Source of the DNA: Mytilus californianus
Taxonomy: Eukaryota
Reading direction: 5' to 3'
DNA length: 64,000 nt
Assembly: GCF_021869535.1 (NCBI RefSeq)
Contig: NW_026262672.1
Location: 5,518,001 to 5,582,000, forward strand
Below the pieces are notes generated by a model. It had not been told where the DNA came from, searched no databases, and saw nothing but the letters and a program-made list of their open reading frames with translations. Positions 21,217-42,639 of the stretch are shown piece after piece. Numbering within the stretch: position 1 is the stretch's first letter; each line of letters starts with the position of its first letter. Made by a program: the position numbers and the translations under genes.

Positions 21217-22740
21217 TTGTTTATACTGTTTGGCTCTTAAAACTATATATTTTGCCACAAGCAAGGGGTAAAATACAAGAATTCAATTTCATTTTAAGTC
21301 TCCCTTATCCTATTAGTAAGGAAAAATGGTGACATTGATTACTGTTATTCCTTTTGTTTGTTGCCATTTTTTGTACTTTTAAGTTGTATTTTTTAAGTTT
21401 ACGAAATTAAGAATGTGCAAGTTAACAAGTAGTTTCTGAGTTGAAAATGTAAGCTTTCCTTTGCTCTTTGCCATACAAAGTCATCAAGTCTAAAAAAATA
21501 TAGATATACAGACAAAAACAGAGTCAAACTCTTGAAAGCTGTGCATGTGAAAATGGATTGACATGGGGTTAAATTTAAAAAAGCCATCAAGTTATCCCCA
21601 CTGATAAAAAAAATTACCTTAACTCCTATTGGAACTACCAGATTTTCTTTGGATTTTGCAGAGCTGTTGTCATGTGCTGTCTGTGCTTTCAGTGCAAGAT
21701 TTCCTCCTGCCTCTCATATATTCTTATTAATAAATCTCTTTGACCTGTGCAGATGAAGAAAAAAGGGTTAATGAACAATTGGACTAATTCAATTTAAATA
21801 CAGAAATAAAATACACAATTTTGTATACCTTGTTTTACGAAAAAAATCTTGTCTTGCACCTTAGCCTTACCCTATATTTTTACACCCTCATATCTAATTA
21901 TATTTAATCTCTAAGTTTTTTAAATGGATCATATTAAGATTTGCCAGGATATCATTTCTGTGCTTAATTAGTGGTTTAAACTGGTCTTTGAGTGTGAATA
22001 ATTTTTATGCACCAGCCACCTGTCCTATGACATGGACCTGTTGTTCAGTGGTTGTCGTTTGTTGGTGTGATTCATATGAGTTTATCGTTTATGGTAGTTT
22101 TTTTTATATAGATTAGACCAATGGTATTTCTGTTTGAATTGTTAAAACTAGTCATTTATGGGCTCTATATAGCTTGCTGTTTGTTGTGAGCCAAGGCTCT
22201 AGATCTGTGTTAAAAGTCATACTTTAACCTGATATCATTAACTTTTTATACATTCTGACTAGGATATGGAGGTTGTCTCATTGGCACTCATACCACATCT
22301 TCTTATTTATATAATATTACACACGCATGATCTTCATTATATTTGTGAACAGCAAGCAAAAACCTATTTCTAATGAAAAATCAGTAGATTGCATCCAAGA
22401 AAAAAACTTTTGTTACATATAAATTATTAGACCAAATTTGATAAAAAAAAATCACAATTTCATACACTTTTGTTATTCTTTAAAGAAAGAAGAAATCTTT
22501 TAAAAAAGGATGTGTTTTAGTAGTACATTTTTGGTCTGGTGAGAATTAGTCTGCAGCAGCTTCTATAACAAAACTACAACTTATCAATATATTGCAAATT
22601 TTCTGAAAACTAAAGGGCAACATTCACTGTACTCCTGTGGAGATACAAATTCCCTAATATCAAAAGGTCAGTATTACTCGATTTATTTCACTTGACTGGG
22701 CAGAGTTTAACTGGTTGGCTCATAATAAACCAGTCCATCT

Positions 22741-23169
22741 CCCGGGGGAGTTACTTCCTATATTTTTAGTGGTATGAGTGTGCCGCAAAACAGGGTCACT
22801 TTTTCATGCCCTGCTTGTTAGAACAGGGTCCCTTTTTAATGTCCTGCTGGTTAGAACAAGATCGCTTTTTCATGCCCTTCTGGTGAGAACAGGGTCTTTT
22901 TTAAACAAAGTATTTGTCTAGAAAAGGGTCGCTTATTTAACTGTTTAAGATACAGTTTAGAACCCGGGTCTAGAACTGCATCTATTTTATATGGTCTAGA
23001 ACAGGGTATACATTTTTTTAGCGTGTATAGAACAGGGTATGTTTTTCAATATTTTTGTTAAGAACAGGGTATGTTTCTCAATTTTTTCTGGTTAGAACAG
23101 GGTATGATTTGGCAAGTGCTGTCGGCACAGTTATACCTGAAAGGAGAGTCAGTAACCCCCCCCCCCGGG
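22741..23169. mobile_element. MITE with CCCGGG termini and an internal TAGAACAGGG repeat
   Basis: Ends CCCGGGGG..GTTAC and GTAACCCC..CCCGGG; TCCATCT on both flanks; many internal AGAACAGGG copies. Confidence 0.8.
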
Positions 23170-23901
23170 TCCATCTATAGATAGGTTTTTAGAATAAACT
23201 CATCAATGAAGCGTCCAGTCATTCTTTTGTAAATTCCTTTGAAGACACTGATAAGTGATTAGAAATCAGTAATAATTATAACAGCAATCATCCTAATCAC
23301 ACACATCTTCAAATAGACTGTCCATATGCAAAGTAAAACGTAAGCTCTGCTCGATCAGTTGAAATAACATTGGTTATATGTGTCAGTTATAACATTGATA
23401 AATCTTACCAAGACTGTGGATATCATTGGAACTGGTATTCATGGTATTCATGGACCTTGCATTTGGTGTACTGGACTCTCTACAAGGACCACTGCTGCCA
23501 ACACCACTTGTCCTTGGTGTATTAATACTACTTGTGCTTGGTGTATTAATACTACTAGTGCTTGGAGTATTCAACATGTTCCGGACTGGTGTTTGACTTA
23601 TCTGCAAAGATATTTTCATTTCTTAGGTGTTAAGCAGTTTCCTCTCTGCAATTTTACAAATAGCCTGTATTTCAGTATGTGTACTTGCACAGTCGCCTGA
23701 AGATTTCATAATCATAGCGAAAAAATGGTGGATATAAAATATTTTTAGTAGTATTATAATAGAATAATAATTATAATACTACTAAAATTATTTTATTTCC
23801 ACCATTTTTTCACTATAATTATGAAGTCTTCAGGCAACTGTGGTACTTGCATGTCTTATGTTTATATTCTGTATGCTGAGACATGGAACACTGTAATAAA
23901 T

Positions 23902-24090
23902 GAGGGGCCTGATGGGGGGGTCTCATCACGATTCACGAGTTGATTTTTTTGTCAATCACGATTCACAGAAAATAAATTTCCATGATCACGGATCACGAAA
24001 ATATAAAAAAAATTAAATCTGTAGAAAAACGGATCACGATAACGAAAATGCGCCGATCACGAAGAACGAAAATAACCCATCAGGCCCCTC
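23902..24090. mobile_element. MITE with GAG..CTC termini and a 6-bp TSD
   Basis: Perfect 15-bp TIR GAGGGGCCTGATGGG; ATAAAT on both flanks. Confidence 0.85.
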
Positions 24091-26344
24091 ATAAATAAGT
24101 ATCAATATGCCAAAAATAAAATATAGGAATACAATCACATCCAATTCATGGTCAGATTATATGTTTTTATACAGACAAGTTTGTCTAAGAATTTACCTTT
24201 CTTATGCATGTCTTAGTTTCTAACAGTATGTCCCATGCTAAATTTAGACATTGGGGTTTTCCATCTGATTTTCGTTGATGTAAGCGATTATGAGGATTTC
24301 GTTATAAAATTGTTGCAAAGTGCTTTCTTTGAATATCACCAGTTTAATGATTTATAAACTAAAACCGGCGCTTCTCTGTCTACTAAGATTTGTTCTGTAA
24401 TAGAAAATCCAATATTGACACAGCCTATGCCCCTTAGATCATCATAACAATATATGTTCTCAGTGAGTGGATATTGAGTTATCTTGTAAAAGGCTGATGG
24501 AATTTGCGTTTAAATACATGTATACACACTTACTCTGCTTACTTGTCTTGATGTGGATGAATTCTGATGAAGGATATCAGGACTTGTTGCCAGGAATTCA
24601 TCCGTCCTTACATCATCCTCGCTTAGACAGTCTTCATGCTCGCTGTCTTGTATCACATCTCTTAAATTACGTGCTGCTCTCTGTCGAACACGACTCCTTT
24701 GAATATCAGCAAGAGGTGTTTGGTCCAAAGTTTCATCATCAGAAATATCGTTGAAAGACATGTTTGATACTAGATCTACAGTGATGACAACATTCGTGTT
24801 TGAATAGGCGCCGAAATCGCAAGAATCGTGTCTGCGGCTGTGTAAAAGAGATAAGGATGGCATGCCAAGATGCTGATTGGCTACGTTAAAGACATTTCCA
24901 TATACAGATTGGAAAATAACCAAAACTTCAACCGCATGGGATTGATACTTCAGCGCCATTATTGAACCTGAGAGTTTTTATCAGCTTAGATTTTTTTTAT
25001 AAATGGTGTAAGTATATCATTTAAAAAGCCTCTTAAACTTTACAGAAAAAAATATGGATATTGTGGTATATATATGTGCCCTTGTCCAAAGGTTCAATAG
25101 CCTGCAGCACCACCACTGAGTGCTTCAATGAGAAACTCACTAGAGAAAATCTCCTTGACACTTACAAATACCTACATGGTTTAAAATATGTATCTTGTTT
25201 TTATCTTATACCAAAAATTAAAAAAGAAATTGAAAAATATTACTTACTGTACATGTACATATGCATTTCAGCCATTTGCATACAAAAAATTGAAATTATA
25301 ATTTTAATCCTAAACAATATTGTTAAACCAGGCATGCACCTGCCAGTTAATGTTTTTTCTATATAAAAAGAGGGGGGATATGACCTTTATTGGGACTCCA
25401 GGATCGGGTGTTTTTAAGCTTTGGATTTCTGCATTGACCCTTTTGGGATCCAGGAATTCTTTTTTCGAATTTCTGGATGTCGGATGTCAGGATTTAAATT
25501 CATTTAAAATTCGGGACCTCAGGATTTCGTGTTTTTAAGTCCAGGATTTCGGGATCAGGACCCCTCCTACCCCACCCCCACACCCCCACCTCTATAAAGA
25601 AGAAGAAGAAGAACAAGATGCATGTACATTGTTAACATTATAAAAGAACATATATAACAGAGTCAACAGAGTCATAAATTTACATATTTTCACTGTTGAA
25701 CACTGTTTAAAGCAGAATTATTTTTAATTTAAAAATTATTTATGGCAGTGGTGGATCAAGAGTAATTTTCAAAAGGGGGGTAGGTGACATCTTTTTTTAT
25801 TCATATTAAAATTATTTCCTCAGCCATAAAAAAGATGTTTGCCCTAACCCTTACCTACCCTAAAAAGAGCCGCATACTCAAAATATTTTCTTGTCCTGAT
25901 GTGAAATTTTTTTTTCAATCAGATAGGCATGGAGATAAAAAAAACATTTGACACATTAATTTCTCTTTGTCAAAAAAGAAAAAAGACAATGCCTACTTTC
26001 CTGATTAAACTGATTCAACCTTCGGGTAGGATTTGGACAAACCAAATTATTTTTATAAGTGTGGCCCAGTACCATTGCTAACTTGTACATTTTGTACCAA
26101 TATAAAAAAAGAAGATGTGGTATGATTGCAATAGAGACAAGTCTCCCCACAAGATACCAAATGACACAGTAATTAACAACTATAGGTCACCATACCACCT
26201 TCAGCAATGAACAATTAATTTAAGATAATTTAAGAATTTAAGAATAAATTAACACTATTAAAAAAATGTATATCTCCAGATTCCAAAGGTCACCAAATTG
26301 GCAGGTGAGCCACAAACTCTTTCAGAGTCTAGTTTGATGACCTG

Positions 26345-27500
26345 TTTTTATACGACTGTAAAAAATTTTTGCGGTCGTATATTGGTATGACGTTGGCGTC
26401 GTCGTCGTCGTTGTCGTCCGGCTTTGTCGTCGTCGTCGTTGTCGTCCGGCTTTGTCGTCGTCCGAAGACACATTGGTTTTCGCACTCTAACTTTAGTTTA
26501 AGTCAATGGATCTCTATGAAATTTTACCACAAGGTTCAATACCACTAAAGGAAGGTTGTGATTGATTTTGGGGGTTATGGTACCAACAGTTAAGGAATTA
26601 GGGGCCAAAAATAAGCATTTTTTTTAACTTCCAGACATAACTTGTGTGTTAGTGTATGGATCTCTCTGACATTGTACCACAAGGTTCCATATCACACAGG
26701 GAATACTGGGATTGATTTTGGGGTAATTGCCTCAAAATATTAGGAATTAGGGGCCAAAAAAGGGGCAAAAAACAAGCATTTTTCTAGTTTCATGACAATA
26801 ACTTGTGTGTAAGTGTATGGATCTTTCTGAAATTGTACTACAAGGTTCCATATCACAAAGGGAAAGCTAAAATTGAGTTTGGGGGTAATTGCCCAAAACG
26901 TTTAGGATTAAGGGGCCAAAAAGGGGCCAAAATAAGCATTTTTCTAGTTTCCAGACAATAACTTGTGTTCAAGTGTATGGATCTCTCTGAAATTGTACTG
27001 CAAGGTACCATACCACAAAGGGAAGGCTGGGATCGATTTTGGGGGTAATTGCTTCAAAATTTTAGGAATTAGGGGCAAAAAAAGGGGCAAAAAAACAAGC
27101 ATTTTTTCTAGTTTCAGGACAATAACTTGTGTGTAAGTGTATGGATCTTTATGAAATTGTACTACAAGGTTCCATATCACAAAGGGAAAGCTGGGTTTGA
27201 GTTTCGGGGTAATTGCCCTAAACGTTTAGGAATTTGGGGCCAAAAAGGGGCCAAAAAACAAGCATTTTTCTAGTTTTATATATAAAAGCAAATAATAATG
27301 ATATGGTTTGAATAGGTAAATTTAAAATTTTTAAGTTCTTAGACCACATTCATTCTGTGTCAGAAACCTGTGCTGTGTCAAATATTTAATCACAATCCAA
27401 ATTCAGTGCTGTATCAAGCTTGAATGTTGTGTCCATACTTGCCCCAACTGTTCAGGGTTCGATCTCTGCGGTCGTATCAAGCTGCGCCCAGCGGAGCATT
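26345..27500 (+). mobile_element. Helentron/HINE (DINE-1-like) non-autonomous element with an internal array of about 180-bp units
   Basis: T-rich start with the ATACGAC/GCGGTCGTAT sub-inverted repeat, a (GTC)n microsatellite, 4-5 tandem units, a second GCGGTCGTAT and a short GC hairpin at the 3' end. A reverse-oriented fragment occurs at 54715-54930. Confidence 0.75.
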
Positions 27501-27533
27501 TTATTTTTATTTATTAAACGTTTTTATTTCAGA

Positions 27534-29596
27534 ATGCTTTATGGAGAGATAATAGTGATAAAGAGAAGCGGTGTAGATGGAGCACATTTTCCCTTAACTG
27601 TTAAAAACTGTTTGTTTGGAAGGTAATTATAATTAAAGTACTTATATAAAAGAAAATGATTATCTTGAATACCATGCTTCACATGTATATCTCTCTTTCC
27701 CATTTCTTAACTTCGTTTTACTTGAAGCAAATGTTATGAAACTAACGCGCAACGCCTATTACTACAAATGTGAGATTGAGTTTTATTTATTAAATTTTAG
27801 TGTCATCACAAGGTGTTATTGAATTATGTCACTTTATAAAATTTATGCAAGCTGGGGCATCATTCTTCTTTTAATCCCCCCAAGGGTGACTGGGGAATAG
27901 AAGTATGGTCACCATTGGTCTTCCTCCGACCGGCAGTAAAACCCGTGCTAAAGTGGGGCGTCCGTTTGGCTGTGCGGGATGTACAAATTTGCAGCCACGT
28001 CCGGTCAGAATGGGGACGTTAAATCCGATGCCTCGTGTAAAGAGAGTGCCACGCTCTTTGCACGTTAAGAACCCTTGCAACAACTCTTTGAGGGGTCCGT
28101 AGGTGACCTGTTGCAAGGCTAAATTTCTGTCCCTATCCAATATACCCTCATTTCCCGTGGCAGTCTAAATTTCTCCGACCATAATCCCTTAATCTATTAC
28201 AGAACCTACCTATTGTATTTATTGTGAACTTGTTCTCGTCCTGAATATGCATGAAATATTTGCCACTGGACGTTAAGCAACCAACAATCAATCAATCAAT
28301 CTTCTTTTAATCCTCATGGCTTTCTTGACAGAAATTGAAAGGATCTCTATATACATTTTAGTATACATGTAATGTGCATAATGCAAAAAATCATTTATTT
28401 TTTGTTATGCTACAGCAAATACTTTTTTAGAGTTTGTGTGAATTTTACATTTTTTGGGGTACCATTTATAGTAAAATACAGTCGATTTTGAAATGCATGC
28501 AAGGTACAAAATGTATATACAGGATATACTGACAATGACTTTGTCATATTAAAGCACCATTCTTGAAAATTCAGTAACCCAGGGTCAAATAGGGTAGACA
28601 TATATAATTATTATCGGCTTAAAAAGTTTTTGAACTTTATTCTTTGAAAACGCTACAGGCATGTTATGTATTATGCGCTCATGGCGCAGCTGTCTATTTT
28701 CATCATGCTTGAAAATATTGATTGGAAAACTGGTATATAATAGTTTTATCATGTTAGACCAGTTACAGATGAAGTTCGAATTTATTTTTAGTCTGATAAA
28801 TTTGTTCAGAGTTTAAGCCATTGGACTCAAAAAACTCACTTACACAATAAAAAAAATCAGTTTTCAACACTTTTTTTGTCATGCTTGAAGATATTTGTTA
28901 AATAGTTTACACCATGACATGGTATAGATCAAGTTAAAATTTTGTTCTTATACAATGACATTTTAACTGGTAGGGGAGGTAGGGGACTATGTATTACCAT
29001 GCAATACTCACCATGCTTACAGAGTGCTTGTCTTTCATCATGAGTAAAGATTTTTATTTGATATAAATTTGGTATATATGTATAATATAGTCTTAAAATG
29101 AGACGTTACAGATCAAGGATTCAAGTTCCAATTTCGTTTTGGTTAAATTAATTGTTAATGGTAGGGGACTATGTTTTGCCATGCAATACTCTCAGAATGT
29201 ATTCTGGATACTATCCAAGCTGGTCTGTGACCACACTTGTATTTAATGTAATTAAAGGACTAGTTGTAGATTAGATTATTCTGAAATCATAAAAACTAGT
29301 TAGTTTCCCTGCTTGCTGTTAAGGATTATCATTAAGAATGTAGCTTCAGTTAGACCCAAAAGTCAACCCATTATAGTATTAACCATGTAGATTTGTGTAG
29401 TCTTTTTTATATTTTTTTCAGGGGCAAAGATTGTGATATAATAATTAAGCTTCCAAATGTTTCCGGAGAACATTGTAGAATTAATGTATCAGACAATAAA
29501 CAGGTGAATTGTATTTAAAATCTTAGTTAACTAAAACTAGTACCAAACCATGAAACAACAGTACTGATCATGCTGATATATCCAGTGGTGGATCCA

Positions 29597-29629
<33 letters not shown>

Positions 29630-32600
29630 GTTCCGGGGGTTGGAACCCCCCTTTTTTTTGGCCGATCAATGCATTTGAATGGGGACACATAGTTGGAACC
29701 CCCCTTTTTTTGGGCCGATCAGTGCATTTGAATGGGGACATATAGTTGGAACACCCCCTTTTTTTTGGCCAATCAATGCATTTGAATGGGGATATATAGT
29801 TGGAACCCCCTTTGTCATGGGTTGGGAACCCTCCTTTTTTAAAATGGCTGGATCCACCCCTGTATATCGGGTAAAAAAAATATTTGTTTTGTTTTCTGAC
29901 CCTTATGGTTATGACCATAGTTATCGTTGCAAACACTATCATTAAATTAAAGTGTAGATTATCTTCCTAGCATGTCCTAATTTTTATGCCCCACCTGTTA
30001 AGTTATGGTTAAAAATGGAAAATGATAGGGAGAGTAGGACATCTTTGTACTGAGGAAACATTTTCCTTTAGTTTTCATGCCAAATTTTATTCAATTGTAT
30101 ATACAACGAAGTTTAATTTGAATTGTAAAATTAACAACTATAAGTCACTAAACAGACTTCAACAATGTGTCTAATTATAAATCATTCTTCTGTCCAAAAA
30201 TGTTTTATTTTGAAAAAACTCAACTGTATGAAATATGTACTGTTCATTTCTTTTGTAGGTTTTTTTGACAAACTTGAGTATAGATAATCCTGTCTTAGTC
30301 AACTCTTCATATTTTGACAAACCAATAAAATTAAATCATGGAGATGTATTCACCATCATAGACAGATCTTTCCGCTTTGATGAAACAGAGGAATCAAAGA
30401 AGAGCAAATTAAGAAATCCAGACAAAGATTTGAATTTGAACAGACCATCAATCAGGATAGATGATGCACCAAAGGTAATTTGTATTTTTAGTCCCCTACT
30501 GACAAAGTCGAAGTAGACTTTAGGTTTGCACTCTGTCCGTCTGTCGGTCTGTTCATTTGCCAGTACGGCAAATCAGTTTTCTTCACTCTTTTCTTCAGGC
30601 TTGAAGATATTGATTTGATTTTATCATGGCAAGTTACAGATCAAGTTCGAGTTTTGTTTCAGTCTAATGATTTTGTGCAGAGTTATGGTCCTTGGAAAAT
30701 TCACTTAAATAATCAGTGTTCCATACTTTTTAGTCCCCTACTGACGAAGTCACAGGGGACTTTAGGTTTGCACTCTGTCTGTCTGTCCACCCTTCAGGGC
30801 AGCAAATCAGTTTTCCAGGCTTTTTCTTTGTTCTTGAAGATATTGATTTGATATTTGGTATATAGTTTTGGAAAGAGTTCCATATGGCACCCCATGGAAT
30901 AAACTGTAATACATTATTGTGTTCTTTTAGTATGGTGGGGGTGCCATATGGAACTCTTACCGTATTTTAAGCAAAAAGAATAAAATAAAGAAGGGGGATA
31001 GCCAGAATTGATTATTGTATATAATCAAGTTCTTTTTGTTTCTTTGTGTATTTTCTTCGGTCAACTATATGTGTATTCAAGGTATTGGATATTTATTATG
31101 CATGTTTTAACCAGTTGATATTGATGAAAGCTAGGGACTCATAGTTTGCCCTTTTATTGCATCTTAATTTTTCATGATTAAACAACAGCTTGGGTTATGG
31201 CTTCATTGGTTTTTATATAAGTTTTTGAAGAATAATTAAAAAGCAGAAAACAGATGAAAATTAATATTTGGTGCCGAACTGACCAACTTAATGCCGAAAT
31301 GACTTTAAAATAGTTGCCTATTTGATCAGATGCCGATTTGACTTTTTCGATAGGTGCCGATTTAACTTGTACCCTCTGAACAACAGAGAGGATTGAGTGT
31401 ATCCTGTTAAACTGTTGACCCTTCATAGTTCTATTTCCTGGATTTAAAATTTATTATTTTTTTAGCCATATTTTGTCAGTTGCTTACTGCAGGTTGACAG
31501 TTTCCGAAGGCAGGTCTGGTTTCCTCTAAATATAAATCTTCCCAGTTTTTGAATGACTGAATAAAGCATAAATTAATGTTCTCAATGAATTCTATTTAAA
31601 CTATAATACAAGACACTAAGAAATAATATGAGGTGAAGACACAATTATAAGGGCTATTCCAGAAATGTCTGTATGGGGAGGGCGGAGGCACATTAATAAA
31701 AAAAAATTGCATGGGCTACTTCACATATTTTCCCAATCAAAACTTACAATTAAGGAAAAATGAATTAAAATTTTATTCAAATAAAAAGTGCATTTTCCTC
31801 CCAATAAAATCAATTCTGGAATAGCCCTTAGTGAGACTTGCAATAAGAATAACATTGAACATGGGAAGGGGTGAAGCAAGCCATGTCATATAAAATCTGC
31901 AAAAAAAAATCATATTAATTTTCAATTTTTGAGGAAAAATTTAGATGAGCTACTAAAAATGGACTTAACATGAAGAATAAGAGGTCAAAATTTACTCCGA
32001 ACAGCCCAGATACCACCCCCTGCAATCTAGAAATTTTCCGGCTTTACGAGAAGGGGGGATACCCCCTCTCGAACTCACCCCCCCTTTTGCCTCTGCGACG
32101 CTTGGTTCGGGCCTTGCGGCCCTCGTGATTGCCTGCTACTTTTATGTTTCTTCCTTTTATTCAAAAAATTATTGAGAACACTGATGTTATATACCTTCTG
32201 CAGTGTCGATGTGGCATGCAGTATGTTGGCGAGACAGAACAGCTATTCAACAAACGCATGAATGGTCATCAAAATGACTACACCTGCAAGCCCTACCTCC
32301 CTGTGAGTCGTCATTTAAGATCACCTAGGCACGCCCAAACTGATCTTAAAAACCTTACCATCACAATCATAGACCACAGTGAGGGTTGGTCAAGGGCCGA
32401 AAGACTTGCTCAGGAAAGATTTTGTGTAAGAAAGCTAAGGACAGTTTCCCCAACAGGCATAAATGAAAAAAAATAGAATGAGTCACTCATTTTTCTACCA
32501 TCATCACTCATTTTCCAGACATCACTTGTTTCCAGTAACTCCGGCTTCCTTACTTGACTCCTACAGTGTTAGGGAAGTTTTTGAATTATACTAGTTGAAA

Positions 32601-35600
32601 TATCATGGTCAAGGTATTTTTATTTCATTTTTTTAGTAGGTAGTTTGTGATGAAGTGTAAGTCCAATCAACTTGAAACTTAGTACACATGTTCCCTTTGC
32701 TATGATCTTTTTAATTTTAATGCAAAATTAGAGTTTTTACCACAGTTTCACGGTCCATTAAACATAGAAAATGATTGTGCACGTGGGGCATCCGTGTGCT
32801 TGGGACACATTCTTGTTATTTTTGGCATGTCTTTGAGTCGTTTTTTAGAAATTTTAAAATAGTACAAGCAAATCTATATATGATGTTCTGGTAAAACTGT
32901 TTAACTTTCTTTATTGTAAAGAATTCAAGATTGCTATAGTTTAACAATCAAAATAGATTGATATATCAGATTCATTTTACTTCGTGATCATACTGATGAA
33001 GGACATCTGTTAACTGAAATAATTAACATTTGTTAATTAATTGTTATTTTATGGTGATCTTGTATCCTTTTAGACTGGTTATATATATTTATATGTACAA
33101 AATCATTAATGCTACTTATATTTCCTTTTAGTCTTTGAAAAGTAAAAGTAAAAAGAAGTCAAAAGAAGAAGTGAAGTCTAGAAGCAAAAGACGTCGTATG
33201 CTGAAGAAACAAAAGTAAGAATTAACATCCAACATGTTTATACTTGCCTCCTCAAAAAGTAACTGTTATATTGTGGCTTATGAAATATCACTTCATTGAA
33301 TTGATACCTAATACTAATGAATAAAAACAAAAATTAAACTTCCACACTATCCTGAATACAATGTAGTTGTTCATGATCATCTATCACTACGGCCTACTTT
33401 TCAGGGAGTTTGTTTACTGTTTTTTTGAGAAATAATAATAACATATGATTACAAATAAAAAAAAAAATTTGAAATTATCAATTTTTTTTGTCTGGAAAAA
33501 ATCCTGTGAAATGCAAGACAAAGGGAATTTGCAACTCAGTTACTATTCGTATAAAGCTTTATATTGAAGAAGATGTGGCATGAGTGCCAATGAGACAACT
33601 CTCCATCCAAGTCACGATTTATAAAAATAAACCATTATAGGCAAAAGAAGGGTCTTCACCACTAAGCTTTGACTAACACTGAACAGCTAGCTAAAAAGGT
33701 CCCCAAAATTTACTAGTGTAAAACCCATTCAAACAGGAAAAACCAAGGGTCTTATCTATATAAAAAACAAGAAAAACTAATGAACCACACCAACAAACGA
33801 CAACTATTAAACATCAGATTCCTGACTTGGGACATGTGCCAACAATAACAGGGGGTTTAAATGTTTTAATGGTACCAAACCTTTACCCTTATCTGAAACA
33901 ATAGTGTAACATCACAACATAGAAAGACACCTTATAAAATATCAATTGAAATGGCTTAAATCAAAAGACATATTAACACAAGTGAACATACACTGAACAA
34001 ATAAATTTGATCTATGATACAATGTAAACAATTAAATAAATCAAATTAGTTAGTCCGTCCAGTTTCAGGTTAAAATTTTGGTAAAAGATTTTAGTCAAGG
34101 TAGTTTTGATGAAGTTGATCATGAATTCCAATCAACTTGAACTTTGTGACTTCAACTTGAAACTCTGTATTCATGTTCACCATGATATGATCTCTCTTAA
34201 TTGAATGAAACTACCAATAGCATGAATAAAGGAAGGGAACAAGAAACTGCTGTAGGAGACTTGCTGTCCCAAGGATTTCAAGAAAAAAATGTTTCTGCCT
34301 AGTTGGTCAGCTTGTTACATGTATAAGACAAACAACCAAAACTGATTCTGACATGCCCATTTCAGTTATTGTTACTAATTATAAAGATACCAGTTTTTGT
34401 CTCGCCTTGACGGAGTCAAAAAGCGAGACATAGGTATGCGTCAACAATGTATTAGTTTGTGATAAGGTCTAGTTCATGGTGAACCACTAGTGGTAGGTCA
34501 ATGATATTTGGTATGCAGTTGTATTAGCATTGGCACATCTCATTACCTTGGAGATTATTTGGCCCCGCCGCCTCAGTCAAGGTCTATTGACTTTGAAACT
34601 TTTCATAGTTTACATGTATTAGTTTGTGATTAGGTCAATTTATGGGGAACCACTAGTGGTAGGTCAATGATATTTGGTATGCAGTTGTATAAGCATTGGC
34701 ACATCTCATTACCATGGAGATTATTTGGCCCCGCCCCCTCAGTCAAGGTCTATTGACTTTGAAACTTTTCATAGTTTACTTGTATTAGTTTGTAATTAGG
34801 TCAATTTATGGGGAACCACTAGTGGTAGGTCAATAATATTTGGTATGCAGTTGTATAAGTATTGGCATATCTCATTTCCATGGAGATTTTTTGGCTCTGC
34901 CCCCTTAGTCATGGTCTATAGACTTTGAAAATTTTGCTAAGTTAACATGTATTAGTTTGTGATTAGGTCAGTTCAAGGGGAACCATTAGTGGTAGGCCAA
35001 TGTTAATTGGTGTTCAGTTGTATAAGCATTAGCACATCTCATTTCCATGGAGAATATTTGGCCCCCGCCCCCTCAGTCATGGTCTATTTAACTTTTGAAA
35101 CTTTTGCTGAGTTTACATGTATTAGTTTGTGATTAGATCAGTTTAAGATGAACTGCTAATGTTAAGTCAATTATATTTGGTATGCAAATTTATTGGCATT
35201 TGCAAGTATCGTTTCCATGGAGATTATATAGCCCCACCCCTGATAATGGTTCATTGACTTTTAAACTTTTACATAGTTTACAAGTTAATGTTTGTGTTTA
35301 GGTTTGTTTAAAGGGAAAGACTTATAATAAGTCAATGGTATTTGGTATGCAGTTGTATTAGCATTAGCAAATCTCATTCCATGGAGATTGTTTAGCCATG
35401 TACCTTCAGTCATGGTTCATCGACTTTGAATATTTGCATAACTTACATGTTAAAGTATTGCTATTTTAATTTCAACATTTGCATTATCAAAATTACAAAA
35501 AAGCGAGACATATCTCTGTGATAACAGTTTATATTCTTTTTACTTAAGAGTTGTAAAGGACAAATGTTAACCATTCACTTTTATTTCAGATATTGGGAAC

Positions 35601-35818
35601 AAAGAGAAAAAGAAGGGGAAAATGACAATATAGATGTAGTTGAAAATGATAAAAATAGACAAATAGCAGGAACAGAAAGAAAACCTAGTGATGATAACTT
35701 TTATGTGGACATGTTTAAAGATCCATTATTTTCGAAAATGGTGACATACCAAAAGGCTAAAAGATTATCCTTAGCTTTGAAAGAAAAAGGACAGAAAAAT
35801 ATTGATATTTTAGAATAG
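27534..35818 (+). CDS. MKI67-like: Predicted 5-exon gene (232 aa): Ki-67-type FHA domain, basic NLS-like segment and short tail
   Basis: Exons 27534-27622 (MLYGEIIVIKRSGVDGAHFPLTVKNCLFG-R), 29422-29503 (GKDCDIIIKLPNVSGEHCRINVSDNKQ), 30259-30474 (VFLTNLSIDNPVLVN..LNHGDVFTIIDRSFRFD..), 33132-33214 (SLKSKSKKKSKEEVKSRSKRRRMLKKQK) and 35590-35818. All introns are GT-AG with phases 2,0,0,2; 699 nt with no internal stop. The N-terminus closely matches the Ki-67 FHA sequence as I recall it. Exons 4-5 are less certain than exons 1-3. Confidence 0.85.
27878..28299 (+). mobile_element. SINE-like retroposon copy 5, in an intron of the FHA gene
   Basis: TSD TCTTCTTTTAATCC at 27864-27877 and 28300-28313. 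Confidence 0.9.
29583..29862. mobile_element. MITE with CAG(T/G)GG(T/C)GGATCCAG TIRs
   Basis: Inverted termini, TATATC on both flanks and internal repeats of about 55 bp. An opposite-orientation relative lies at 55677-55822. Confidence 0.75.
30874..30964. repeat. Short foldback/MITE remnant
   Basis: AGAGTTCCATATGGCACCCC and its reverse complement about 50 bp apart. Confidence 0.7.
31648..31830. mobile_element. MITE with 17-bp TIRs
   Basis: TAAGGGCTATTCCAGAA ... TTCTGGAATAGCCCTTA. Confidence 0.8.
32170..32476 (+). pseudogene. GIY-YIG endonuclease, 3' fragment of a Penelope-like element
   Basis: DVIYLLQCRCGMQYVGET...RMNGH...H...RLAQE...LRTVSPTGIN matches the C-terminal GIY-YIG pattern of Penelope-like elements. 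Confidence 0.8.
34394..35536 (+). mobile_element. HINE-like element with an internal array of about 150-bp units
   Basis: TTTTTGTCTCGC/AAGCGAGACA sub-inverted repeats at both ends. The unit containing GGAACCACTAGTGGTAGGTCAAT is repeated about 6 times. Confidence 0.7.
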
Positions 35819-36173
35819 AAATTTATTCAGTTTGGATTTATATATAGTTTTATGTTGCAAGTGTTTTTTATTTTTCTATTTTCTTTTTATAAACCCATAA
35901 TCAAAATCTACCTTTAATAGTCAAGTGGATTGTAAATAGGAATTATTTGATTTCATGTATAAGCAATGAATTTTATATATATTTTGAGATAAAATTTCTG
36001 CCCTTATTTTTGGTACCAAAGATATGAATAAGATTCTAGAGAGCATGCACATTGACTACTAGTGAAGCAGCTACTTGTATTCAAGAAAGCTTGCACATTG
36101 GTTTATTATACAGTGAAGCAGCTACTAGAATACTTAATTCATAATTTTGAATCAAAACTTTATTGCATGTTTC

Positions 36174-39059
36174 ATGGCAGAAAAAGCAAAGCGTCCAAGA
36201 AAATCTTGCCCTAAATGTTATACAGTTTTCTCAGACAAACATGCTCGTAGACATCTACTTGAATGTAACGTTCAATTTTGTGAAAGTGAAGTACCTCAAT
36301 CTGATAACGAAAATATACCTGTATCAAGTGTGGAAAATAACACATCAGATTATCAAAATGATATCAGTGATGATGAACATGAAATAAATTATAATTGTAT
36401 GAATAAATTCAGAAATTTATCAAATATATCTCATAATAATTTAGAAGATGAGGACATTGAAAGCTACTTTGATAGATGTGAAGATAATCTGAACGATTCA
36501 TATAGTTCTGATAATTACTCAGATGTAGAGTTTGATATTGATTGTGATGAAAGTATTGGTGTAGATCAAGAACATAATTCAGAGTCCGATATATCTCGGA
36601 TTACTTATTGGTTTTGTAAACTTTTATTATTATGGCAATGTATTTATTATATATCAGATGCAGCTATTTGTTTTCTTTTGAACATTTTAGCAACATTTTT
36701 TAAACTGTTGTCTGTGAATTCAGATGTTTGTTCTAAAGTACAAAATGTTTTCCCCAAAAACATGTACCAGTTGTCTAAACTTTTGAAGAGTAATATGTTA
36801 GATTTTAAACAATATGTTGTTTGTACCAACTGCTATTCATTGTATGAATTCGAAGATTGTTATCATATTGTTGAAGGTTCAAAAGTCTCTAAAAAGTGCT
36901 CTTTTATAGAGTTTCCTAATCATAGACTTCCTTATTTAAGAAAAAGATGTAATCAGCCTCTTTTAATGGAAATTAAAAGTGAACCTTCAAAAATATTAGC
37001 CCCTTACAAAATATACTGTTACAAATCTATTGAGTCAAGCTTAAGTTATTGTGTTAAAAGACAACATTTTGAAGACTTATGTGAACAATGGCGATTGAGA
37101 GAAACAAGAGAAGATATTATGTATGACATTTATGATGGAAAATTATGGGATGATTTTAATGGAAAAAAATATAATTTTTTTACAAAAGAGGATAATTATG
37201 GTTGCATTTTAACTGTTGATTGGTTTCAACCATACAAACATACTCATTGTTCTATAGGTGTCATGTACATAGCATTTTTTAATCTTCCACGAGATCAAAG
37301 ATTTAGAAGAGAAAATGTTTTACTAGTTGGTGTTATTCCGGATATGAAAACAGAGCCTAAGACAAACACCTTTGTTACCCCTCTTGTTCAAGAGCTAAAG
37401 AAGTCTTGGTCAGATGGTTTTCAATTGTTTTCAAATAAGTCACCTTTGATATTGAAATGCTTTAAACTTGCACTCATATGTGTTGGATGTGACATTCCTG
37501 CTAGTAGAAAGCTGTGTGGTTTCCTTGGACATGCAGCAACCTCAGGTTGCAACAAATGTAAAAAGAAATTCCCAGGAACTGTAGGTGAAAAAAATTATGG
37601 TGGTTTTGATAGATTAGAATGGCCGTCCAGAGACAACGAAAGTCATCGTCAAGAATGTGGTTTTATAAATAATTCTACTAGCAAGGGAGATAAAGAAAAC
37701 ATTGAACGTCAGTTTGGTACAAGATATTCTGCATTGCTTGAGCTTGAATACTTTGATCCAGTAAGAATGACAGCAATTGATCCAATGCATAACTTATTTT
37801 AAGGAACAGCAAAACACATGCTTTCTGTATGGAAGACAAAGAAATTATTATGTGATGACGACTTTAAAAAAATTCAGACAAAACTGGATCCATTTGAATG
37901 TCCCTCAGATGTAGGGAGACTACCTAAGAAATTTGCTTCATCTTATGGGTCATTTAATGCAGATCAGTACAAAAATTGGACCCTATTGTTTTCTATTTAT
38001 GCTTTAACTGATTTATTGCCAAAGGAACACCTTGAATGCTGGAGAAAGTTTGTGTTAGCATGTAGACGGTTGTGTTCAATGTTTATAAGTGTTGGTAATG
38101 CAAAAGTTGCAGATAGATTGCTAAATGACTTTTGTAAAAAATTTGAACAATTGTATGGGCAAGATTTTGTCACACCAAATATGCACCTTCATGGGCATTT
38201 ATATGATTGTATAATAGATTTTGGACCAGTATATTCTTCCTGGCTTTTTAGTTTTGAAAGAGAAAATGGTATATTAGGCTCTTACAAAACTAATAAAAAA
38301 AACATAGAGACTCAATTAATGAGGAGATTTTTAAAAGAGTCTTTTGCAAGGGAAAAAGAATTCCAAATGGATGAAAAATTTATGTCTTTATTCAATGATA
38401 TGTCAAATACTACAAGGGAGAGGGGTACATTAAATGATGTTTCTGTTTCTTTGAAACCAAGCGTTCTCGATATGTCATCACAATATGTACCTGTAAAAGA
38501 AGTATGTTGGGATTTATCAGATAACATTTTTGTTCCTAAAATGAAGGATGCTGTTCTGAGTGATTGTGAAATAAGACTGTTAAGCCAAATGTATTCAACA
38601 CTGTATCAGTATGATTTTATTGTTTGTCCCTCTGTCAAAGTGTGCAAAAACTTGTATTTAAATGGAACATTGCTTGGTTGCAAAATGAGCAGAAGTGTTA
38701 GATCATCCTATATTTTAGCTTATTGGTGTAATAACGAAGGGACAATTGATACTGACAATTTTGATTTATCTCCTCATCCAGGACAAATTGTACAAATGTA
38801 TAAGCATAGTATTATTGTAAATGGAGAAACAAAGACACATTTTTTAGCGAAAGTAAATTGGTACAAGAATTTACCTGCTTCTGTACAGCACTATAATGGT
38901 AAACCGATTGAAATATGGTCTTCAGAATTATTTGTTCAAGAAGGGCCTGCTTTATTTATACCAGTCCACAGAATTAAATGTAGGTTTGTTCATGCGAAAG
39001 CAAAATTTAACAGCAGAAATGTAATTATTGTTGCACCAAGAGAGCGTCATATTTTATGA
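36174..39059 (+). pseudogene. CACTA/EnSpm (Transposase_21-like) transposase, about 961 aa, with one in-frame TAA at 37800-37802
   Basis: Motifs DIYDGKLW, LTVDWFQP, NLPRDQRFRRENVLLVGVIP, GCDIPASRKLCGF, IDPMHNLF*GTAKH (normally HNLFLG), PNMHLHGHL and WLFSFERENGILG. The two ORFs are in the same frame. Confidence 0.9.
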
Positions 39060-40119
39060 ATATGGATCCAGTTATAATGATACAATCTGTAATCATATTG
39101 TTTTACTTTGTACAAAAAAATACAACTATTTAAGAAAATTGATTATATGACAATGTCAAAATTACAATATTTTCTTGTCATGATTCCTTTATTTAATTTC
39201 ATGAATGTGTCATGACTCTTTTGTGTTTTTTAAAGGAAGTACTTTTTATGGAGTGTATTTGATTATTGTAGATATTTATGATGTTATGAGTATTCTTTTT
39301 GTATTGGGTATTAAGAATAAGTGTCTTAATGCAGTGTGTTGTACTAATCTTACATGCCAGTTATTGCTTTGAAACAGTAAAATGTAAACAAATTAAACAT
39401 TAAGTTTACTATTAAATAAACAATTTCGTTACACTTATTGTAGTTATTTATATACCACTGCTAATTATTTATGTTTGTTTGTTTAAAAAAGCTTGAGTTC
39501 ATGCATGGTTCTTCTAACCAGGTGTTATACATGTATCATCAAATCATACAAATTTTTAATAAACTATTTGATCACTACAGATCATTACTTAGGGAAAATC
39601 CTTTCAAATATATAAAGATGTGTAAATTTTATCACGTAACAAAGTATCGGAGAAAGGTCAAATGTTTTCTCAACAGTTTAAGATAGTGAAGTAGATTTAT
39701 ACTCTTTCAGCGAAACATCCTGTAGACAATGGTATTAGAGAGTTTTGCTGAGATTGGTTTATAGACACGACTATTTATAAAAGGTTAAATAACTTTCAGT
39801 TCAGGACGAGATGGACCTATTAAATCGCTATGAAAACATATATGAATTTGAATGATCTTTGTTCTCTTGTGCTCAAACATTGAATGTGATTGTCTTTTGT
39901 TTTACACTTAAAAATACACAGAGTGAATCAAACATGTTCCTTATTAAATATTTCAACATGCACAAAATGCCACGTTTGCATGTCATCCCATATAAATGTA
40001 GACAAAAAGTGGGGTATAATGTTTTTGTCCTCTGTATTTACATGTACAGAAAGTTACAGATGACTTCCCGCTCAAATTTTACATTCGGTCATAATTTTGG
40101 GGGGGGGTCATAAATAGTT

Positions 40120-40960
40120 TACCTATACCTTTTGACGTGCATAAAATGTCACAGAAAGTCGGTCCTATACATTTTGACATTCAAAAAATATCCAAGGTTG
40201 TCTATTCTATACCTTTTGACACGCACAAAATGTCAAAGATTGTCTGTCCTTTACCTTTAGACATGCACAAAATGTGAAAGGTTGTCTGTCCTATACCTTT
40301 TAACTTGCACACAATGTGAAAGGTTGTCTGTCCTATACCTTTTGACGTGCATAAAATGTCACAGAAAGTCTTTCCTATACATTTTGACATTTACAAAATG
40401 TCAAAGGTTGTCTGTCCTATACCTTTTGACATGCACAAAATGTCAAAGGTTGTCTGTTCTATACCTTTTGATATGCATAAAATGTCAAAGGTTGTCTGTT
40501 TTATACCTTTTGACATGCACAAAAGTCAAAGGTTGTCTGTCCTATACCTTTTGATATGCATAAAATGTCAAAGGTTGTCTGTCCTATACCTTTTGACATG
40601 CACAAAATGTCAAAGGTTGTCTGTTCTATACCTTTTGATATGCATAAAATGTCAAAGGTTGTCTGTTCTATACATTTTGACATGCACAAAAGTCAAAGGT
40701 TGTCTGTCCTATACCTTTTGATATGCATAAAATGTCAAAGGTTGTCTGTCCTATACCTTTTGACATGCACAAAATGTCAAATGTTGTCTGTCCTATACCT
40801 TTTGATATGCATAAAATGTCAAAGGTTGTCTATTCTATACCTTTTGACATGCACAAAATGTCAAAGGTTGTCTGTCGATTACATTTCAAGGTTCACAAAA
40901 TGTCAAAGATGGTCTTTTGTTTACATTTCAACTTACCAAAATGTCAAAGATGGTATTTTG
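40120..40960. repeat. Right subterminal tandem array (42 bp x about 20)
   Basis: Unit AAAATGTCAAAGGTTGTCTGTCCTATACCTTTTGA(C/T)ATGCA(C/T), containing an inverted pair of the TGTCAAA(A)GG motif. Confidence 0.95.
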
Positions 40961-42639
40961 TCAATAAAAAGGCGACGAAATATTATCTGTAGAGGAAGGT
41001 AGTCTTTTGATTGTATTTCATTATACACAAAAGTCAATCAAAAGATGAGTTTTCATGCAGTGTTTGATCTGTATTTTCAAGTTTCTTCCAAATTTCAACG
41101 TCCTGGTTTTTAGTATCACCTAAATTCATTTTCAGGGGTATATTTGTGTCTGGCTCTCCAACTATATTGTATTCTAGCAATGTCTGTTTTCCTAGACCAC
41201 TATCTTCTGAACTTTCTTTGATAAGCGAATAATAATAGCTTGTCCTCCTGGAAAGAGAAAAATGAACAATTAATATTGCATGTAAAAATAAACCTATCAA
41301 TCCGTTTTATTTTTATATCCACCAGAAGAGGAATGCCTTTTTTTTTCTTTTCTTTTTTTTTTGCTTGTTAATTGCAGTTTTACAGTAATTTGGACAAATT
41401 GTTTCTTTTTGTGTTTTGGGATACAAGTAGTTCGGACACATTGTTTCTTTGTCCTGTATCTACAAGGAGTTCTTGGTGATGCACATGTCACTAAATCTTT
41501 TTTCGCAATGTAAGTTGAACTATCTGCTACTATTCTAAGCTCTTCTGTAGAATACAGAAATTGTCTATATTTTGAAATTTAGAAGTGAAACTAGTACAAA
41601 TGTATGACTTTTCATAGAATTAGGGCGACACGTGTCGTTGTCATGTAAACACCAACGATGTCATAGGGTTAATTTGCAATAAACCATTTGGTTATCAATG
41701 GTCCATCAAAATAGAGAATGTTTCTGTTCTGCCCTGTTACATCTCGCTTTCACACTTCCAAAAGACTGTAGCTGAGAAAAACCCTCTAGTTTGAAGACCC
41801 ATTGATGATCTGTAACCATCTACATGTACCTTACACATATTTAAGGGTCATATCTTTGAAATTACATGTAAAATATAATATTGTTTATTAAATTAAATAT
41901 ATTTTAGTTTTAATATTCATGTACAGACAATTATCAATATATTTAACTCTGATATTTAACTGTTAATTTAAAATTATTGTGTTTACTTTGATTATTTATG
42001 ATGCAAACTACCTACCATACTTATATAATTATATTAATATTAACACTTAAAGCCTTACCACAGTAGTGGAAAGAAATTTTTGTTCATTTATGATCAATTC
42101 ATAATTAAAACCTGGGACAAAAAGTGAACAATAGTCCTAATATCTCCTTTTGTGCCATTCTGAACTCTTTCACCAACATAAATTCTTTCTAAAGATGAGT
42201 TGATGGCCATCAAAGACGGTCGGTCTTCCACTATTTGGACCTTCAAACAAATTGCTGTGTTTTATTTGACATACCTTCCGGTTAAATTAAAGGAATGAAT
42301 GCCAAGACACAACTGAACAACAAATTTATATCAACTTATAGTTTCATTCCTTTTAAAATCACACGGAAAAAAATATATACATACATTTGTTCATCTTTTC
42401 CAATTACTTTCCCCTGTCTATGCTCTTCCTTCCCTGCGCAACTCTTGCCAATTGGTAAATTTCCTTGATGCAGTTTGGAGCCCTTGTACTAAATGAGGTG
42501 CGTCGTCATTTTCAGAACTAGACGGACTTTCTGTCTGGAAAAGTATTGCTTTTTCCCAGTGGTCATCATCCTACATTCTCCTTTTCAACAGTTTCTGTTT
42601 CTTTTTTTTTTATATCATCCTGTTCTCCATGCACATCAA

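What the first reader, a model, noticed from the sequence alone, without database searches (positions are those of the whole stretch)
27534..35818. Stand-alone, intron-containing Ki-67 FHA mini-gene that appears intact
Seen in sequence: a 232-aa open spliced frame with the FHA phosphothreonine-binding residues preserved (FGR, SxxH as VSGEH, NP/VN), followed by a Lys/Arg-rich NLS-like exon. It stops early, with no RVSF-type PP1 motif or long repeat region. Established: Ki-67 proteins are very long and the FHA domain binds phosphorylated NIFK and KIF15/Hklp2. From memory, human MKI67 has introns at the same two FHA positions (phase 2 in the GR arginine, phase 0 about 27 codons later); this needs verifying. 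Inference: DNA-level capture of the host 5' exons plus new 3' exons. The product could act as a mitotic-chromosome or nucleolar tether, or as a decoy.
Basis: partly seen in the sequence, partly recalled or inferred. Interest (0 to 1): 0.85.

Follow-up and report, generated by a model that had tools for sequence, protein, structure and literature searches.

The report
Ki-67 FHA gene inside mussel transposon
A short, intact, intron-containing mussel gene that copies the phosphopeptide-binding FHA domain of the proliferation protein Ki-67 is real and already annotated, and it is a conserved cargo gene of a large multicopy cut-and-paste (CACTA-type) transposon rather than an ordinary host gene.

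Summary
The window is Mytilus californianus (GCA_021869535.1, JAKFGE010000023.1). That model adds two residues from a further upstream exon, so the CDS spans 25003-35818. Exons 1-3 match the solved Ki-67 FHA domain collinearly. The G-R, S, H and N signature residues are present. There is no RVxF motif and no repeat region.

The canonical Mytilus Ki-67-like gene has introns at the same two positions and phases, and the same acceptor one base before the ATG. The FHA exons were therefore copied as DNA.

The gene sits between a divergent 341-aa gene and a Tnp2-type transposase. This three-gene unit recurs in M. edulis and M. galloprovincialis at many loci in two subfamilies. Five sequenced copies all end at the same ...CATGCAGTG terminus, followed by unrelated flanks. 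The left end (about 15019) is only probable, and no target-site duplication was seen.

dN/dS between subfamilies is 0.18 for the FHA gene and 0.11 for the transposase, so both are under selection. The protein's function is inferred, not shown. I found no paper describing this.

The parts
15019..41062 (+). Probable full extent of the CACTA-like (Tnp2-type) DNA transposon copy, about 26 kb including nested repeats. The right end is firm; the left end is only probable.
   Evidence: The right terminus is shared to the base with four other copies. The left end is the best inverted match to the right end among 36000 positions and is anchored by CACTGCA. The three genes inside recur together in other copies.
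15019..15048 (+). Candidate left terminal inverted repeat (starts CACTGCA)
   Evidence: About 75% match to the inverted right end over 30 nt. No target-site duplication: flanks are TTC and TTT.
16477..24761 (-). Divergently transcribed 341-aa multi-exon gene of unknown function. Its start codon is about 240 nt from that of the FHA gene. It belongs to the repeated unit.
   Evidence: Gene call in L004. Exons are conserved in subfamily-B copy L003. A 345-aa counterpart exists in L005. No Pfam hit.
25003..25007 (+).
27533..27622 (+).
   Evidence: Same acceptor and donor positions as canonical Mytilus MKI67-like.
29422..29503 (+).
30259..30474 (+).
33132..33214 (+). Lys/Arg-rich exon (15 K/R of 29), predicted basic helix, NLS-like. 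Not derived from the Ki-67 exons seen.
   Evidence: The same junction appears in M. galloprovincialis model P0001.
35590..35818 (+). Last exon: acidic stretch, then a conserved C-terminal helix motif (NFYxDxxKDPLFSxMVxY..RL), stop TAG
   Evidence: The motif is conserved in subfamily B. No Pfam or PDB relative.
36174..39059 (+). Tnp2-type (Transposase_21 + DUF4218) transposase gene. In this copy it is interrupted once by an in-frame stop, with no frameshift.
   Evidence: Pfam 45 bits against a cut-off of 28.6. 69% aa identity over 966 residues, in a single HSP (one reading frame), to the uninterrupted 1006-aa ORF of L003. dN/dS 0.11.
39931..41037 (+). Subterminal array of about 21 copies of a 42-nt repeat
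   Evidence: The same kind of array lies at the right end of L003 and L005.
41033..41062 (+). Right terminus, ending ...CATGCAGTG
   Evidence: Identical end point in L001, L003, L005 and L006, followed by unrelated flanks.
26476..27256 (.). 160-nt tandem array nested in the first intron; absent from copy L001
27876..28301 (.). SINE-like repeat of about 425 nt nested in the intron after the first FHA exon
   Evidence: Four more copies in the window at 93-98% identity
34425..35405 (.). 166-nt tandem array nested in the last intron; absent from copy L001

Best explanation
The mini-gene is a cargo gene of a large CACTA-like (Tnp2-type transposase) DNA transposon family of Mytilus mussels. An ancestor of the family copied, as genomic DNA with its introns, the 5' UTR acceptor and the three FHA-coding exons of the host Ki-67-like gene. 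These became joined to two unrelated 3' exons: a Lys/Arg-rich helix and a conserved C-terminal helix motif. The resulting 234-aa protein has been kept under purifying selection together with the transposase while the family split into two subfamilies and spread to many loci. Those steps are shown. The following steps are inferred. The protein is an accessory factor of the element. Its Ki-67-type FHA domain reads a phosphothreonine mark, either on the host partners of Ki-67 (NIFK or KIF15 type) or on the element's own acidic, Ser/Thr-rich transposase N-terminus. The basic helix gives nuclear import or DNA/chromatin contact. Together these would link the element's proteins to mitotic chromatin or the nucleolus in proliferating cells. 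The window's own copy has an intact FHA gene but a transposase with one in-frame stop, so it may no longer be autonomous.
For: Gene reality: exact tiling onto XP_052097347.1; Ki-67 FHA is the top hit by sequence and by fold. DNA-level origin: the three intron/acceptor positions are identical to the canonical M. edulis MKI67-like gene. The element's FHA is closest to that gene (67% against 54-58% for other animals). Exons 4-5 are absent from that locus. Inside a mobile element: gene models and clusters place FHA next to Transposase_21 on at least 6 M. edulis scaffolds, at least 6 M. galloprovincialis contigs and 2 chromosomes. L003, L005 and L006 are 98-99.7% identical across the upstream gene, the FHA gene with its introns and the transposase, and all stop at the same base with unrelated flanks. 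The window and L001 (subfamily A) stop at the homologous base, again with unrelated flanks. The terminus reads CACTG in inverted view, there is a 42-nt subterminal array, and Pfam Transposase_21 is above its cut-off. Selection, by Nei-Gojobori counts per exon: FHA gene 0.18 against subfamily B and 0.42 against L001 (FHA exons about 0.3). The transposase gives 0.11 and 0.36-0.38. The C-terminal motif is conserved between subfamilies while the neighbouring residues are not alignable.
Against: The left end is only a best-scoring candidate, and no target-site duplication is visible in the window or in L005. I had no transcript data, so expression rests on the RefSeq model. Against L001 the last exon evolves at about dN/dS 0.9. 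The L001 copy has lost the usual stop and carries Arg at the conserved His. Subfamily B has Tyr at the conserved FHA Asn, so phosphopeptide binding may not be retained everywhere. Only one gene of this subfamily is on record for M. californianus. No evidence bears on the binding partner or on any role in transposition. Haplotigs may inflate copy counts in the older assemblies.
Confidence: 0.75

Rival explanations
1. The FHA exons are the 5' part of the transposase gene. Alternative splicing from a GT inside the last exon (after ..F-S-K/N-M) would join the FHA domain to the transposase, giving an FHA-transposase fusion of about 1200 aa, much as En/Spm makes two products from one transcription unit.
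For: M. edulis and M. galloprovincialis annotations hold many such models with both FHA and Transposase_21 (P0136 1196 aa, P0257, P0260, P0264, P0265). The two genes share a strand and lie 356 nt apart. A GT follows the same codon in both subfamilies.
Against: RefSeq models keep the two apart: 214/234-aa FHA proteins and a 955-aa transposase. The fusion models disagree on the junction (P0136 against P0142). The open frame upstream of the transposase ATG that P0136 uses is 51 codons long in L003 but only 9 codons in the window. Residues after the putative donor (V-T/Q-Y..R-L) and the tail length are conserved between subfamilies, which is unexpected if they were spliced out.
Confidence: 0.12
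2. It is an ordinary host paralogue of Ki-67 that merely lies beside an old transposase insertion. The repeats of the arrangement would then be segmental duplications or uncollapsed haplotypes.
For: The gene has host-like introns and an apparently bidirectional promoter region. Only one copy is on record in M. californianus. No target-site duplication or clear left inverted repeat was found. L001 and L002 share their upstream flank.
Against: Five copies from two subfamilies that differ by dS > 1 end at exactly the same base, with five unrelated right flanks. Copies lie on different chromosomes of one assembly. Near-identical copies (99%) include the introns and intergenic DNA but not the flanks. 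The terminus is CACTG-type next to a Tnp2 transposase.
Confidence: 0.06
3. The window's copy is a decaying relic whose FHA reading frame is open by chance or only recently released from selection. It would have no present function for host or element.
For: The transposase in this copy carries an in-frame stop. Nested satellite and SINE insertions fill the introns. The last exon gives dN/dS of about 0.9 against L001, and the L001 copy shows substitutions at signature residues and several breaks in its transposase copies.
Against: Six exons with canonical splice sites remain open over 10.8 kb. All five FHA signature residues are kept. The FHA exons give about 0.3 against L001. NCBI annotates it as a gene with an upstream 5' exon that an ab initio caller would hardly choose; that last point is my inference.
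Confidence: 0.07

Closest known systems
Ki-67 (MKI67) and the non-vertebrate Ki-67-like proteins
   Same: The N-terminal FHA domain is of the Ki-67 type: 53-55% identity to the solved human domain. It is the top hit by sequence and by fold. It has the same intron positions as the canonical Mytilus gene. Ki-67-like proteins in molluscs and other non-vertebrates are described in bioRxiv 10.64898/2026.06.18.733134.
   Different: It is 234 aa instead of thousands. It has no RVxF PP1 motif, no long disordered repeat region and no recognisable LR chromatin-binding domain. It has a different tail and sits inside a transposon.
En/Spm (CACTA) transposons of plants, with TnpD transposase and TnpA accessory protein
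   Same: It has a Tnp2-family transposase, CACT-type termini, subterminal repeat arrays, large size and more than one intron-containing gene in one element. The properties of En/Spm are from my own knowledge.
   Different: This is an animal element. The accessory gene holds a host-derived FHA domain. The repeat array was seen at one end only. A 3-bp target duplication was not seen. No evidence shows that the FHA protein binds the repeats.
Pack-CACTA / Pack-MULE transduplication, and MULEs or CACTA elements that carry a captured ULP1-like protease domain (Kaonashi type) in plants
   Same: Host gene DNA, introns included, was captured by a cut-and-paste transposon and spread with it (reviews PMC13317346 and PMC8903248 came up and were not read; the ULP1 example is from my own knowledge). 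As in the ULP1 case, the captured domain is under purifying selection.
   Different: Pack elements are non-autonomous and their fragments are mostly not conserved as proteins. Here the carrier encodes its transposase, and the captured exons form a complete, conserved gene in an animal.

Membership tests
FHA domain (Pfam PF00498) | Score above Pfam's gathering cut-off | tested here: met
   P0089 scores 52.3 bits against a cut-off of 20.7. Exon 2 alone scores 22.9 bits.
FHA domain (Pfam PF00498) | Signature residues G-R, S..H and the loop Asn | tested here: met
   Aligned to 2aff residues R31, S45, H48 and N67. Subfamily B has Tyr at the Asn, and copy P0001 has Arg at the His.
Ki-67 protein family (orthologue of MKI67) | N-terminal Ki-67-type FHA domain | tested here: met
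Ki-67 protein family (orthologue of MKI67) | PP1-binding RVxF motif | tested here: not met
   No match to [RK]x(0,1)[VI]x[FW] in P0089 or P0005
Ki-67 protein family (orthologue of MKI67) | Long disordered, repeat-rich central region | tested here: not met
   The protein ends at residue 234. No repeat family in Pfam. No further Ki-67-like exon in the window.
Ki-67 protein family (orthologue of MKI67) | C-terminal LR chromatin-binding domain | tested here: inconclusive
   The tail has no Pfam or PDB relative. A basic helix exists, but its chromatin binding is untested.
CACTA / CMC (EnSpm) DNA transposons | Tnp2-type DDE transposase (PF02992) | tested here: met
   45 bits against a cut-off of 28.6, plus DUF4218. 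An uninterrupted 1006-aa homologue lies in L003.
CACTA / CMC (EnSpm) DNA transposons | Terminal inverted repeats beginning CACT(A/G) | tested here: inconclusive
   The right end ...CAGTG is identical in five copies. The left CACTGCA candidates at window 15019 and L005 777 are the top-ranked inverted matches, but weak.
CACTA / CMC (EnSpm) DNA transposons | Short (2-4 bp) target-site duplication | tested here: not met
   Window flanks are TTC/TTT; L005 flanks are AAC/GTT. This depends on the unproven left end.
CACTA / CMC (EnSpm) DNA transposons | Subterminal repeat arrays | tested here: met
   A 42-nt array lies next to the right end in the window, L003 and L005. None was seen at the left.
CACTA / CMC (EnSpm) DNA transposons | Several copies at unrelated genomic sites | tested here: met
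Pack-type (non-autonomous, gene-fragment-carrying) transposons | No transposase gene in the carrier; captured fragments not conserved as protein | tested here: not met
   The transposase is present in the same unit. The captured exons have dN/dS 0.18-0.42.

The most novel reading that the evidence does not exclude
An animal CACTA-type transposon has taken the phosphothreonine-reading module of the mitotic chromosome protein Ki-67 and keeps it as a core gene. It would use it to dock its transposition proteins onto Ki-67's phosphorylated partners (NIFK or KIF15 type) or onto mitotic chromatin. The element's activity would thereby be coupled to dividing cells, for example germline or early embryonic cells. 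This would be a host cell-cycle reader repurposed by a mobile element.
Probability: 0.2. Interest if true: 0.8.

Novelty: new variant of a known kind. Interest (0 to 1): 0.6.

Why it matters
Capture of host genes by cut-and-paste transposons is well documented in plants. Examples in animals where the captured piece becomes a complete, intron-bearing gene kept under selection with the transposase are rare. Here the captured piece is the FHA module of Ki-67, a protein tied to mitotic chromosomes and proliferation. If the element uses it, this gives a concrete, testable link between a transposon and the host cell cycle. It also matters for annotation. Proteins named "Ki-67-like", "antigen KI-67" or "FHA domain-containing" in Mytilus databases are partly transposon genes. 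They could mislead studies that use Ki-67 homologues as proliferation markers in bivalves, including work on mussel transmissible neoplasia, or that trace the evolution of Ki-67 outside vertebrates.

Tried and rejected
1. A weak Pfam hit of the last exon to Mei5_like (E 0.0018, below cut-off) suggested a second gene. It vanished on the whole protein, and PDB and NCBIfam gave nothing, so I rejected it as noise.

2. I first read L003 as the orthologous locus of another species, which would have meant conserved synteny and a domesticated transposase. The cluster look-up showed it is M. galloprovincialis, a paralogous copy, and the flanks are unrelated. Rejected.

3. I considered the tandem duplication in L001 of the segment equal to window 35817-39118 as marking a small 3.3-kb transposon that would exclude the FHA gene. 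That segment has no inverted termini, and the homology between copies runs well beyond it. Rejected.

4. The exact-protein look-up of the window's transposase ORF was not on record.

5. Look-ups for P0090, P0091, P0094, P0112 and P0136 were not on record. I therefore obtained no intron map from a vertebrate or annelid and no fourth subfamily-B copy covering the left end.

6. The empty-site test, with the two flanks searched apart, found nothing.

7. The bacterial promoter/terminator scan is irrelevant for a eukaryote.

8. Literature searches for an FHA/Ki-67 and transposon link, and for CACTA elements in Mytilus, found no description.

9. I never built the joined 232-aa query. Exons were searched one by one by reference, and the database protein P0089 served for whole-protein scans.


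Full report
**Identity of the window.** The window is AT-rich animal DNA without N runs. Locus L004, fetched through the annotated protein P0089, is 100% identical to window 15003-45818. The window is therefore Mytilus californianus, assembly GCA_021869535.1, scaffold JAKFGE010000023.1, positions 5,518,001-5,582,000.

**The observation.**
They have GT..AG introns of phases 2, 0, 0 and 2 and total 699 nt.
Each exon was searched by reference.
- Exons 1, 2 and 3 hit the solved Ki-67 FHA domain (2aff, 1r21) collinearly at residues 7-30, 32-55 and 60-100, and Ki-67 was the top hit each time and the only one with E below 1.
- A whole-library HMMER search with exon 3 returned Ki-67 proteins of vertebrates, with the FHA domain at about residues 59-110 in proteins of 1400-3700 aa. 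It also returned a few short mussel proteins.
- One of these, P0089 (XP_052097347.1, "proliferation marker protein Ki-67-like", M. californianus, 234 aa), is tiled exactly by the five exon translations. The two split codons give R32 and K159.
- P0089 has two more N-terminal residues.
The CDS spans 25003-35818 with five introns.
- Pfam FHA scores 52.3 bits against a cut-off of 20.7.
- An AlphaFold model from a shallow alignment (mean pLDDT 61; FHA core 75-84) finds 1r21 and 2aff as its best structural matches. It predicts two helices in the tail, at residues 143-168 (basic) and 196-224.
- There is no RVxF motif, and no further Ki-67-like exon anywhere in the window.

**Origin of the FHA exons.**
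- Mytilus also has a canonical Ki-67-like gene. P0107 ("MKI67", M. edulis) continues after the FHA domain with the Ser/Pro/Lys-rich sequence typical of the Owenia and other invertebrate homologues. Non-vertebrate Ki-67-like proteins, molluscs included, are described in bioRxiv 10.64898/2026.06.18.733134.
- At its locus L007 the acceptor lies one base before the ATG. The first intron splits the Arg codon of G-R as AG|G, and the second is phase 0 before V-Y-L-T-N-L-S.
- These positions and phases are the same as in the mini-gene. The FHA exons were therefore duplicated as genomic DNA, not through an mRNA.
- Over exons 2-3 the mini-gene's FHA is 67% identical to the Mytilus canonical domain, against 54-58% to annelid, cnidarian and vertebrate ones.
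- Exons 4 and 5 have no counterpart within 10 kb downstream of the canonical FHA exons.
Human sequence is barred, and my look-ups for an annelid and a lizard gene were not on record.

**The gene lies inside a mobile element.**
- A Tnp2-type transposase gene starts 356 nt downstream on the same strand (36174-39059). It scores 45 bits on Pfam Transposase_21 against a cut-off of 28.6, plus DUF4218. In this copy it is interrupted once by an in-frame stop and has no frameshift.
- Upstream, a 341-aa multi-exon gene of unknown function (16477-24761, minus strand) is transcribed divergently. The two start codons are about 240 nt apart.
- The same arrangement occurs elsewhere. M. galloprovincialis protein P0005 (XP_076115885.1, 214 aa) has an FHA domain, a basic stretch and the same C-terminal motif NFYxDxxKDPLFSxMVxY..RL, at about 40% overall identity.
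- At its locus L003, translated comparison with the window finds four features. These are exons of the upstream gene, FHA exons 1, 2, 3 and 5, an uninterrupted 1006-aa transposase ORF (69% identical) and the 42-nt tandem repeat.
- A search with that ORF found M. edulis and M. galloprovincialis gene models that contain both FHA and Transposase_21 (P0136, 1196 aa, and others). One 90% cluster holds 19 members on at least six scaffolds per species. RefSeq keeps the transposase (955 aa) and the FHA protein as separate genes. Two RefSeq loci lie on different chromosomes of the new M. galloprovincialis assembly.
- Three sequenced copies of this subfamily (B: L003, L005, L006) are 98-99.7% identical through the upstream gene, the FHA gene with its introns and the transposase, apart from nested insertions. 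All three stop at the same base...CATGCAGTG, and their flanks beyond it are unrelated.
- The window has the homologous end at 41062. The M. galloprovincialis copy L001 is 87-96% identical to window 26067-41066 and carries P0001, 92% identical to the mini-gene. It ends at the same base, with a flank unrelated to the window's.
- That makes five independent right junctions in two subfamilies. This is the behaviour of a transposon terminus, not of a segmental duplication.
- Read inward, the terminus is CACTGCATG..., of the CACTA type. Beside it lies an array of about 21 copies of a 42-nt repeat (39931-41037).
- The left end is less certain. A CACTGCA at 15019 begins the best inverted match to the right end among 36000 window positions. 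A CACTGCA at L005:777 is likewise top-ranked. Both scores are only marginally above background, no copy other than L005 reached that far, and no target-site duplication is visible.
- I therefore give 15019-41062 (26 kb with nested repeats) as the probable extent. The element reaches at least to 16477.

**Selection.** I used Nei-Gojobori counts exon by exon, summing counts and not strings.

| Comparison | Gene | dN/dS |
|---|---|---|
| Window vs L003 (subfamily B, dS saturated) | FHA gene | 0.18 |
| Window vs L003 | Transposase | 0.11 |
| Window vs L001 | FHA gene, all exons | 0.42 |
| Window vs L001 | FHA exons 1-3 | about 0.3 |
| Window vs L001 | Last exon | about 0.9 |
| Window vs L001 | Transposase (two copies) | 0.36-0.38 |

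- The transposase was computed on its two open stretches separately.
- The L001 transposase copies carry 3-4 stop-containing codons, and their alignments to the window show 6-7 gap events; whether any of these shift the reading frame was not determined.
- Intron DNA of the element is 87-90% identical between the window and L001, while the transposase coding DNA is 96%.
- The FHA gene has thus been constrained about as strongly as the transposase over the family's history. That argues that it serves the element and is not a dead passenger.
- Signs of decay exist in single copies. P0001 has Arg at the conserved His, and in L001 the usual stop codon of the last exon is gone. Subfamily B has Tyr at the conserved loop Asn.

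**How it most likely works.**
- Shown: the protein consists of a Ki-67-type FHA domain with all signature residues, a basic helix and a conserved C-terminal helix. It is encoded inside a Tnp2/CACTA-like element and is conserved with it.
- Inferred: it is an accessory protein of the element. The FHA domain would read a phosphothreonine epitope. The target would be either the host partners that Ki-67's FHA binds (NIFK, KIF15; established knowledge for vertebrate Ki-67) or the acidic, Ser/Thr-rich N-terminus of the element's own transposase. The basic helix would supply nuclear import or nucleic-acid contact. The C-terminal motif has no relative in Pfam or PDB and would contact another element or host protein.
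I put the element-borne, selected, captured-gene reading at about 0.75, and the specific mitotic-tether mechanism at about 0.2.

**Rivals.**
- An FHA-transposase fusion made by alternative splicing is suggested by the M. edulis and M. galloprovincialis models. Those models disagree on the junction, and the upstream open frame they use is not conserved in the window. RefSeq separates the genes. The residues beyond the putative donor are conserved between subfamilies.
- An ordinary host paralogue beside an old insertion is contradicted by the five shared end points with unrelated flanks.
- A relic open by chance is possible for this particular copy, given its interrupted transposase. It fits poorly with six intact exons, the kept signature residues and the RefSeq model.

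**Novelty.** The gene model itself is known, being in RefSeq and UniProt. The searchable literature describes neither its membership of a transposon nor the capture of a Ki-67 FHA module. Gene capture by CACTA and Mutator-like elements is well known in plants, so this is a new variant of a known kind.

1. After, and again, I wrote short stretches of human Ki-67 and NIFK sequence from memory in my reasoning.
3. One search printed P0122, P0123 and P0125, mammalian Ki-67 N-termini from Logan contigs. P0122 may be human, and P0012 is the human PDB chain. I did not save, align, compare or search further with any of them.

Noticed in passing
window 897-5470 (+): Pieces of a BEL/Pao LTR-retrotransposon pol gene (Peptidase_A17 E 1.9e-44, integrase core, DUF5641), split over several ORFs and therefore broken.
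   Followed up: partly
window 50600-52700 (-): PIF/Harbinger-type transposase (HTH_Tnp_4, DDE_Tnp_4) with a C-terminal SWIM zinc finger, lying in two overlapping ORFs.
   Followed up: partly
window 59201-62273 (+): Exons encoding Roc (E 6e-9) and COR-A (E 1e-10) domains, probably a host ROCO-type GTPase gene.
   Followed up: partly
window 16477-24761 (-): The third gene of the element (341 aa, divergent from the FHA gene) is conserved in subfamily B but has no Pfam match. Its C-terminal exon holds an acidic SSDEE stretch. Function unknown.
   Followed up: partly
L001 14169-21898 (M. galloprovincialis UYJE01003948.1): The segment equal to window 35817-39118 (transposase gene with its upstream spacer) is duplicated in tandem directly after the FHA gene. 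The junction shows no inverted termini.
   Followed up: partly
window 27876-28301; also 7026, 9114, 9842, 13127: A SINE-like repeat of about 425 nt in five copies at 93-98% identity, one of them inside an intron of the FHA gene.
   Followed up: no
window 26476-27256 and 34425-35405: Two satellite-like tandem arrays (160-nt and 166-nt units) nested in introns of the FHA gene. Both are absent from the L001 copy. A unit of the first also lies at 54695-54880.
   Followed up: no
P0128 (M. edulis CAG2191544.1): A gene model that splices subfamily-B FHA exons 1-2 onto an unrelated Cys-rich protein named 'ZAD domain-containing'. It is either another chimera or a prediction artefact.
   Followed up: no
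P0004 / P0093 (ENA and JGI metagenome contigs): FHA exon-3-like ORFs with a Cys-rich continuation resembling subfamily B. This hints at further subfamilies in other, unidentified organisms.
   Followed up: no
P0205 (MAG of Candidatus Thiodiazotropha sp.): A Tnp2-type transposase 45% identical to the mussel one is filed under a bacterial metagenome-assembled genome. Most likely this is host (bivalve) DNA contaminating the bin.
   Followed up: no
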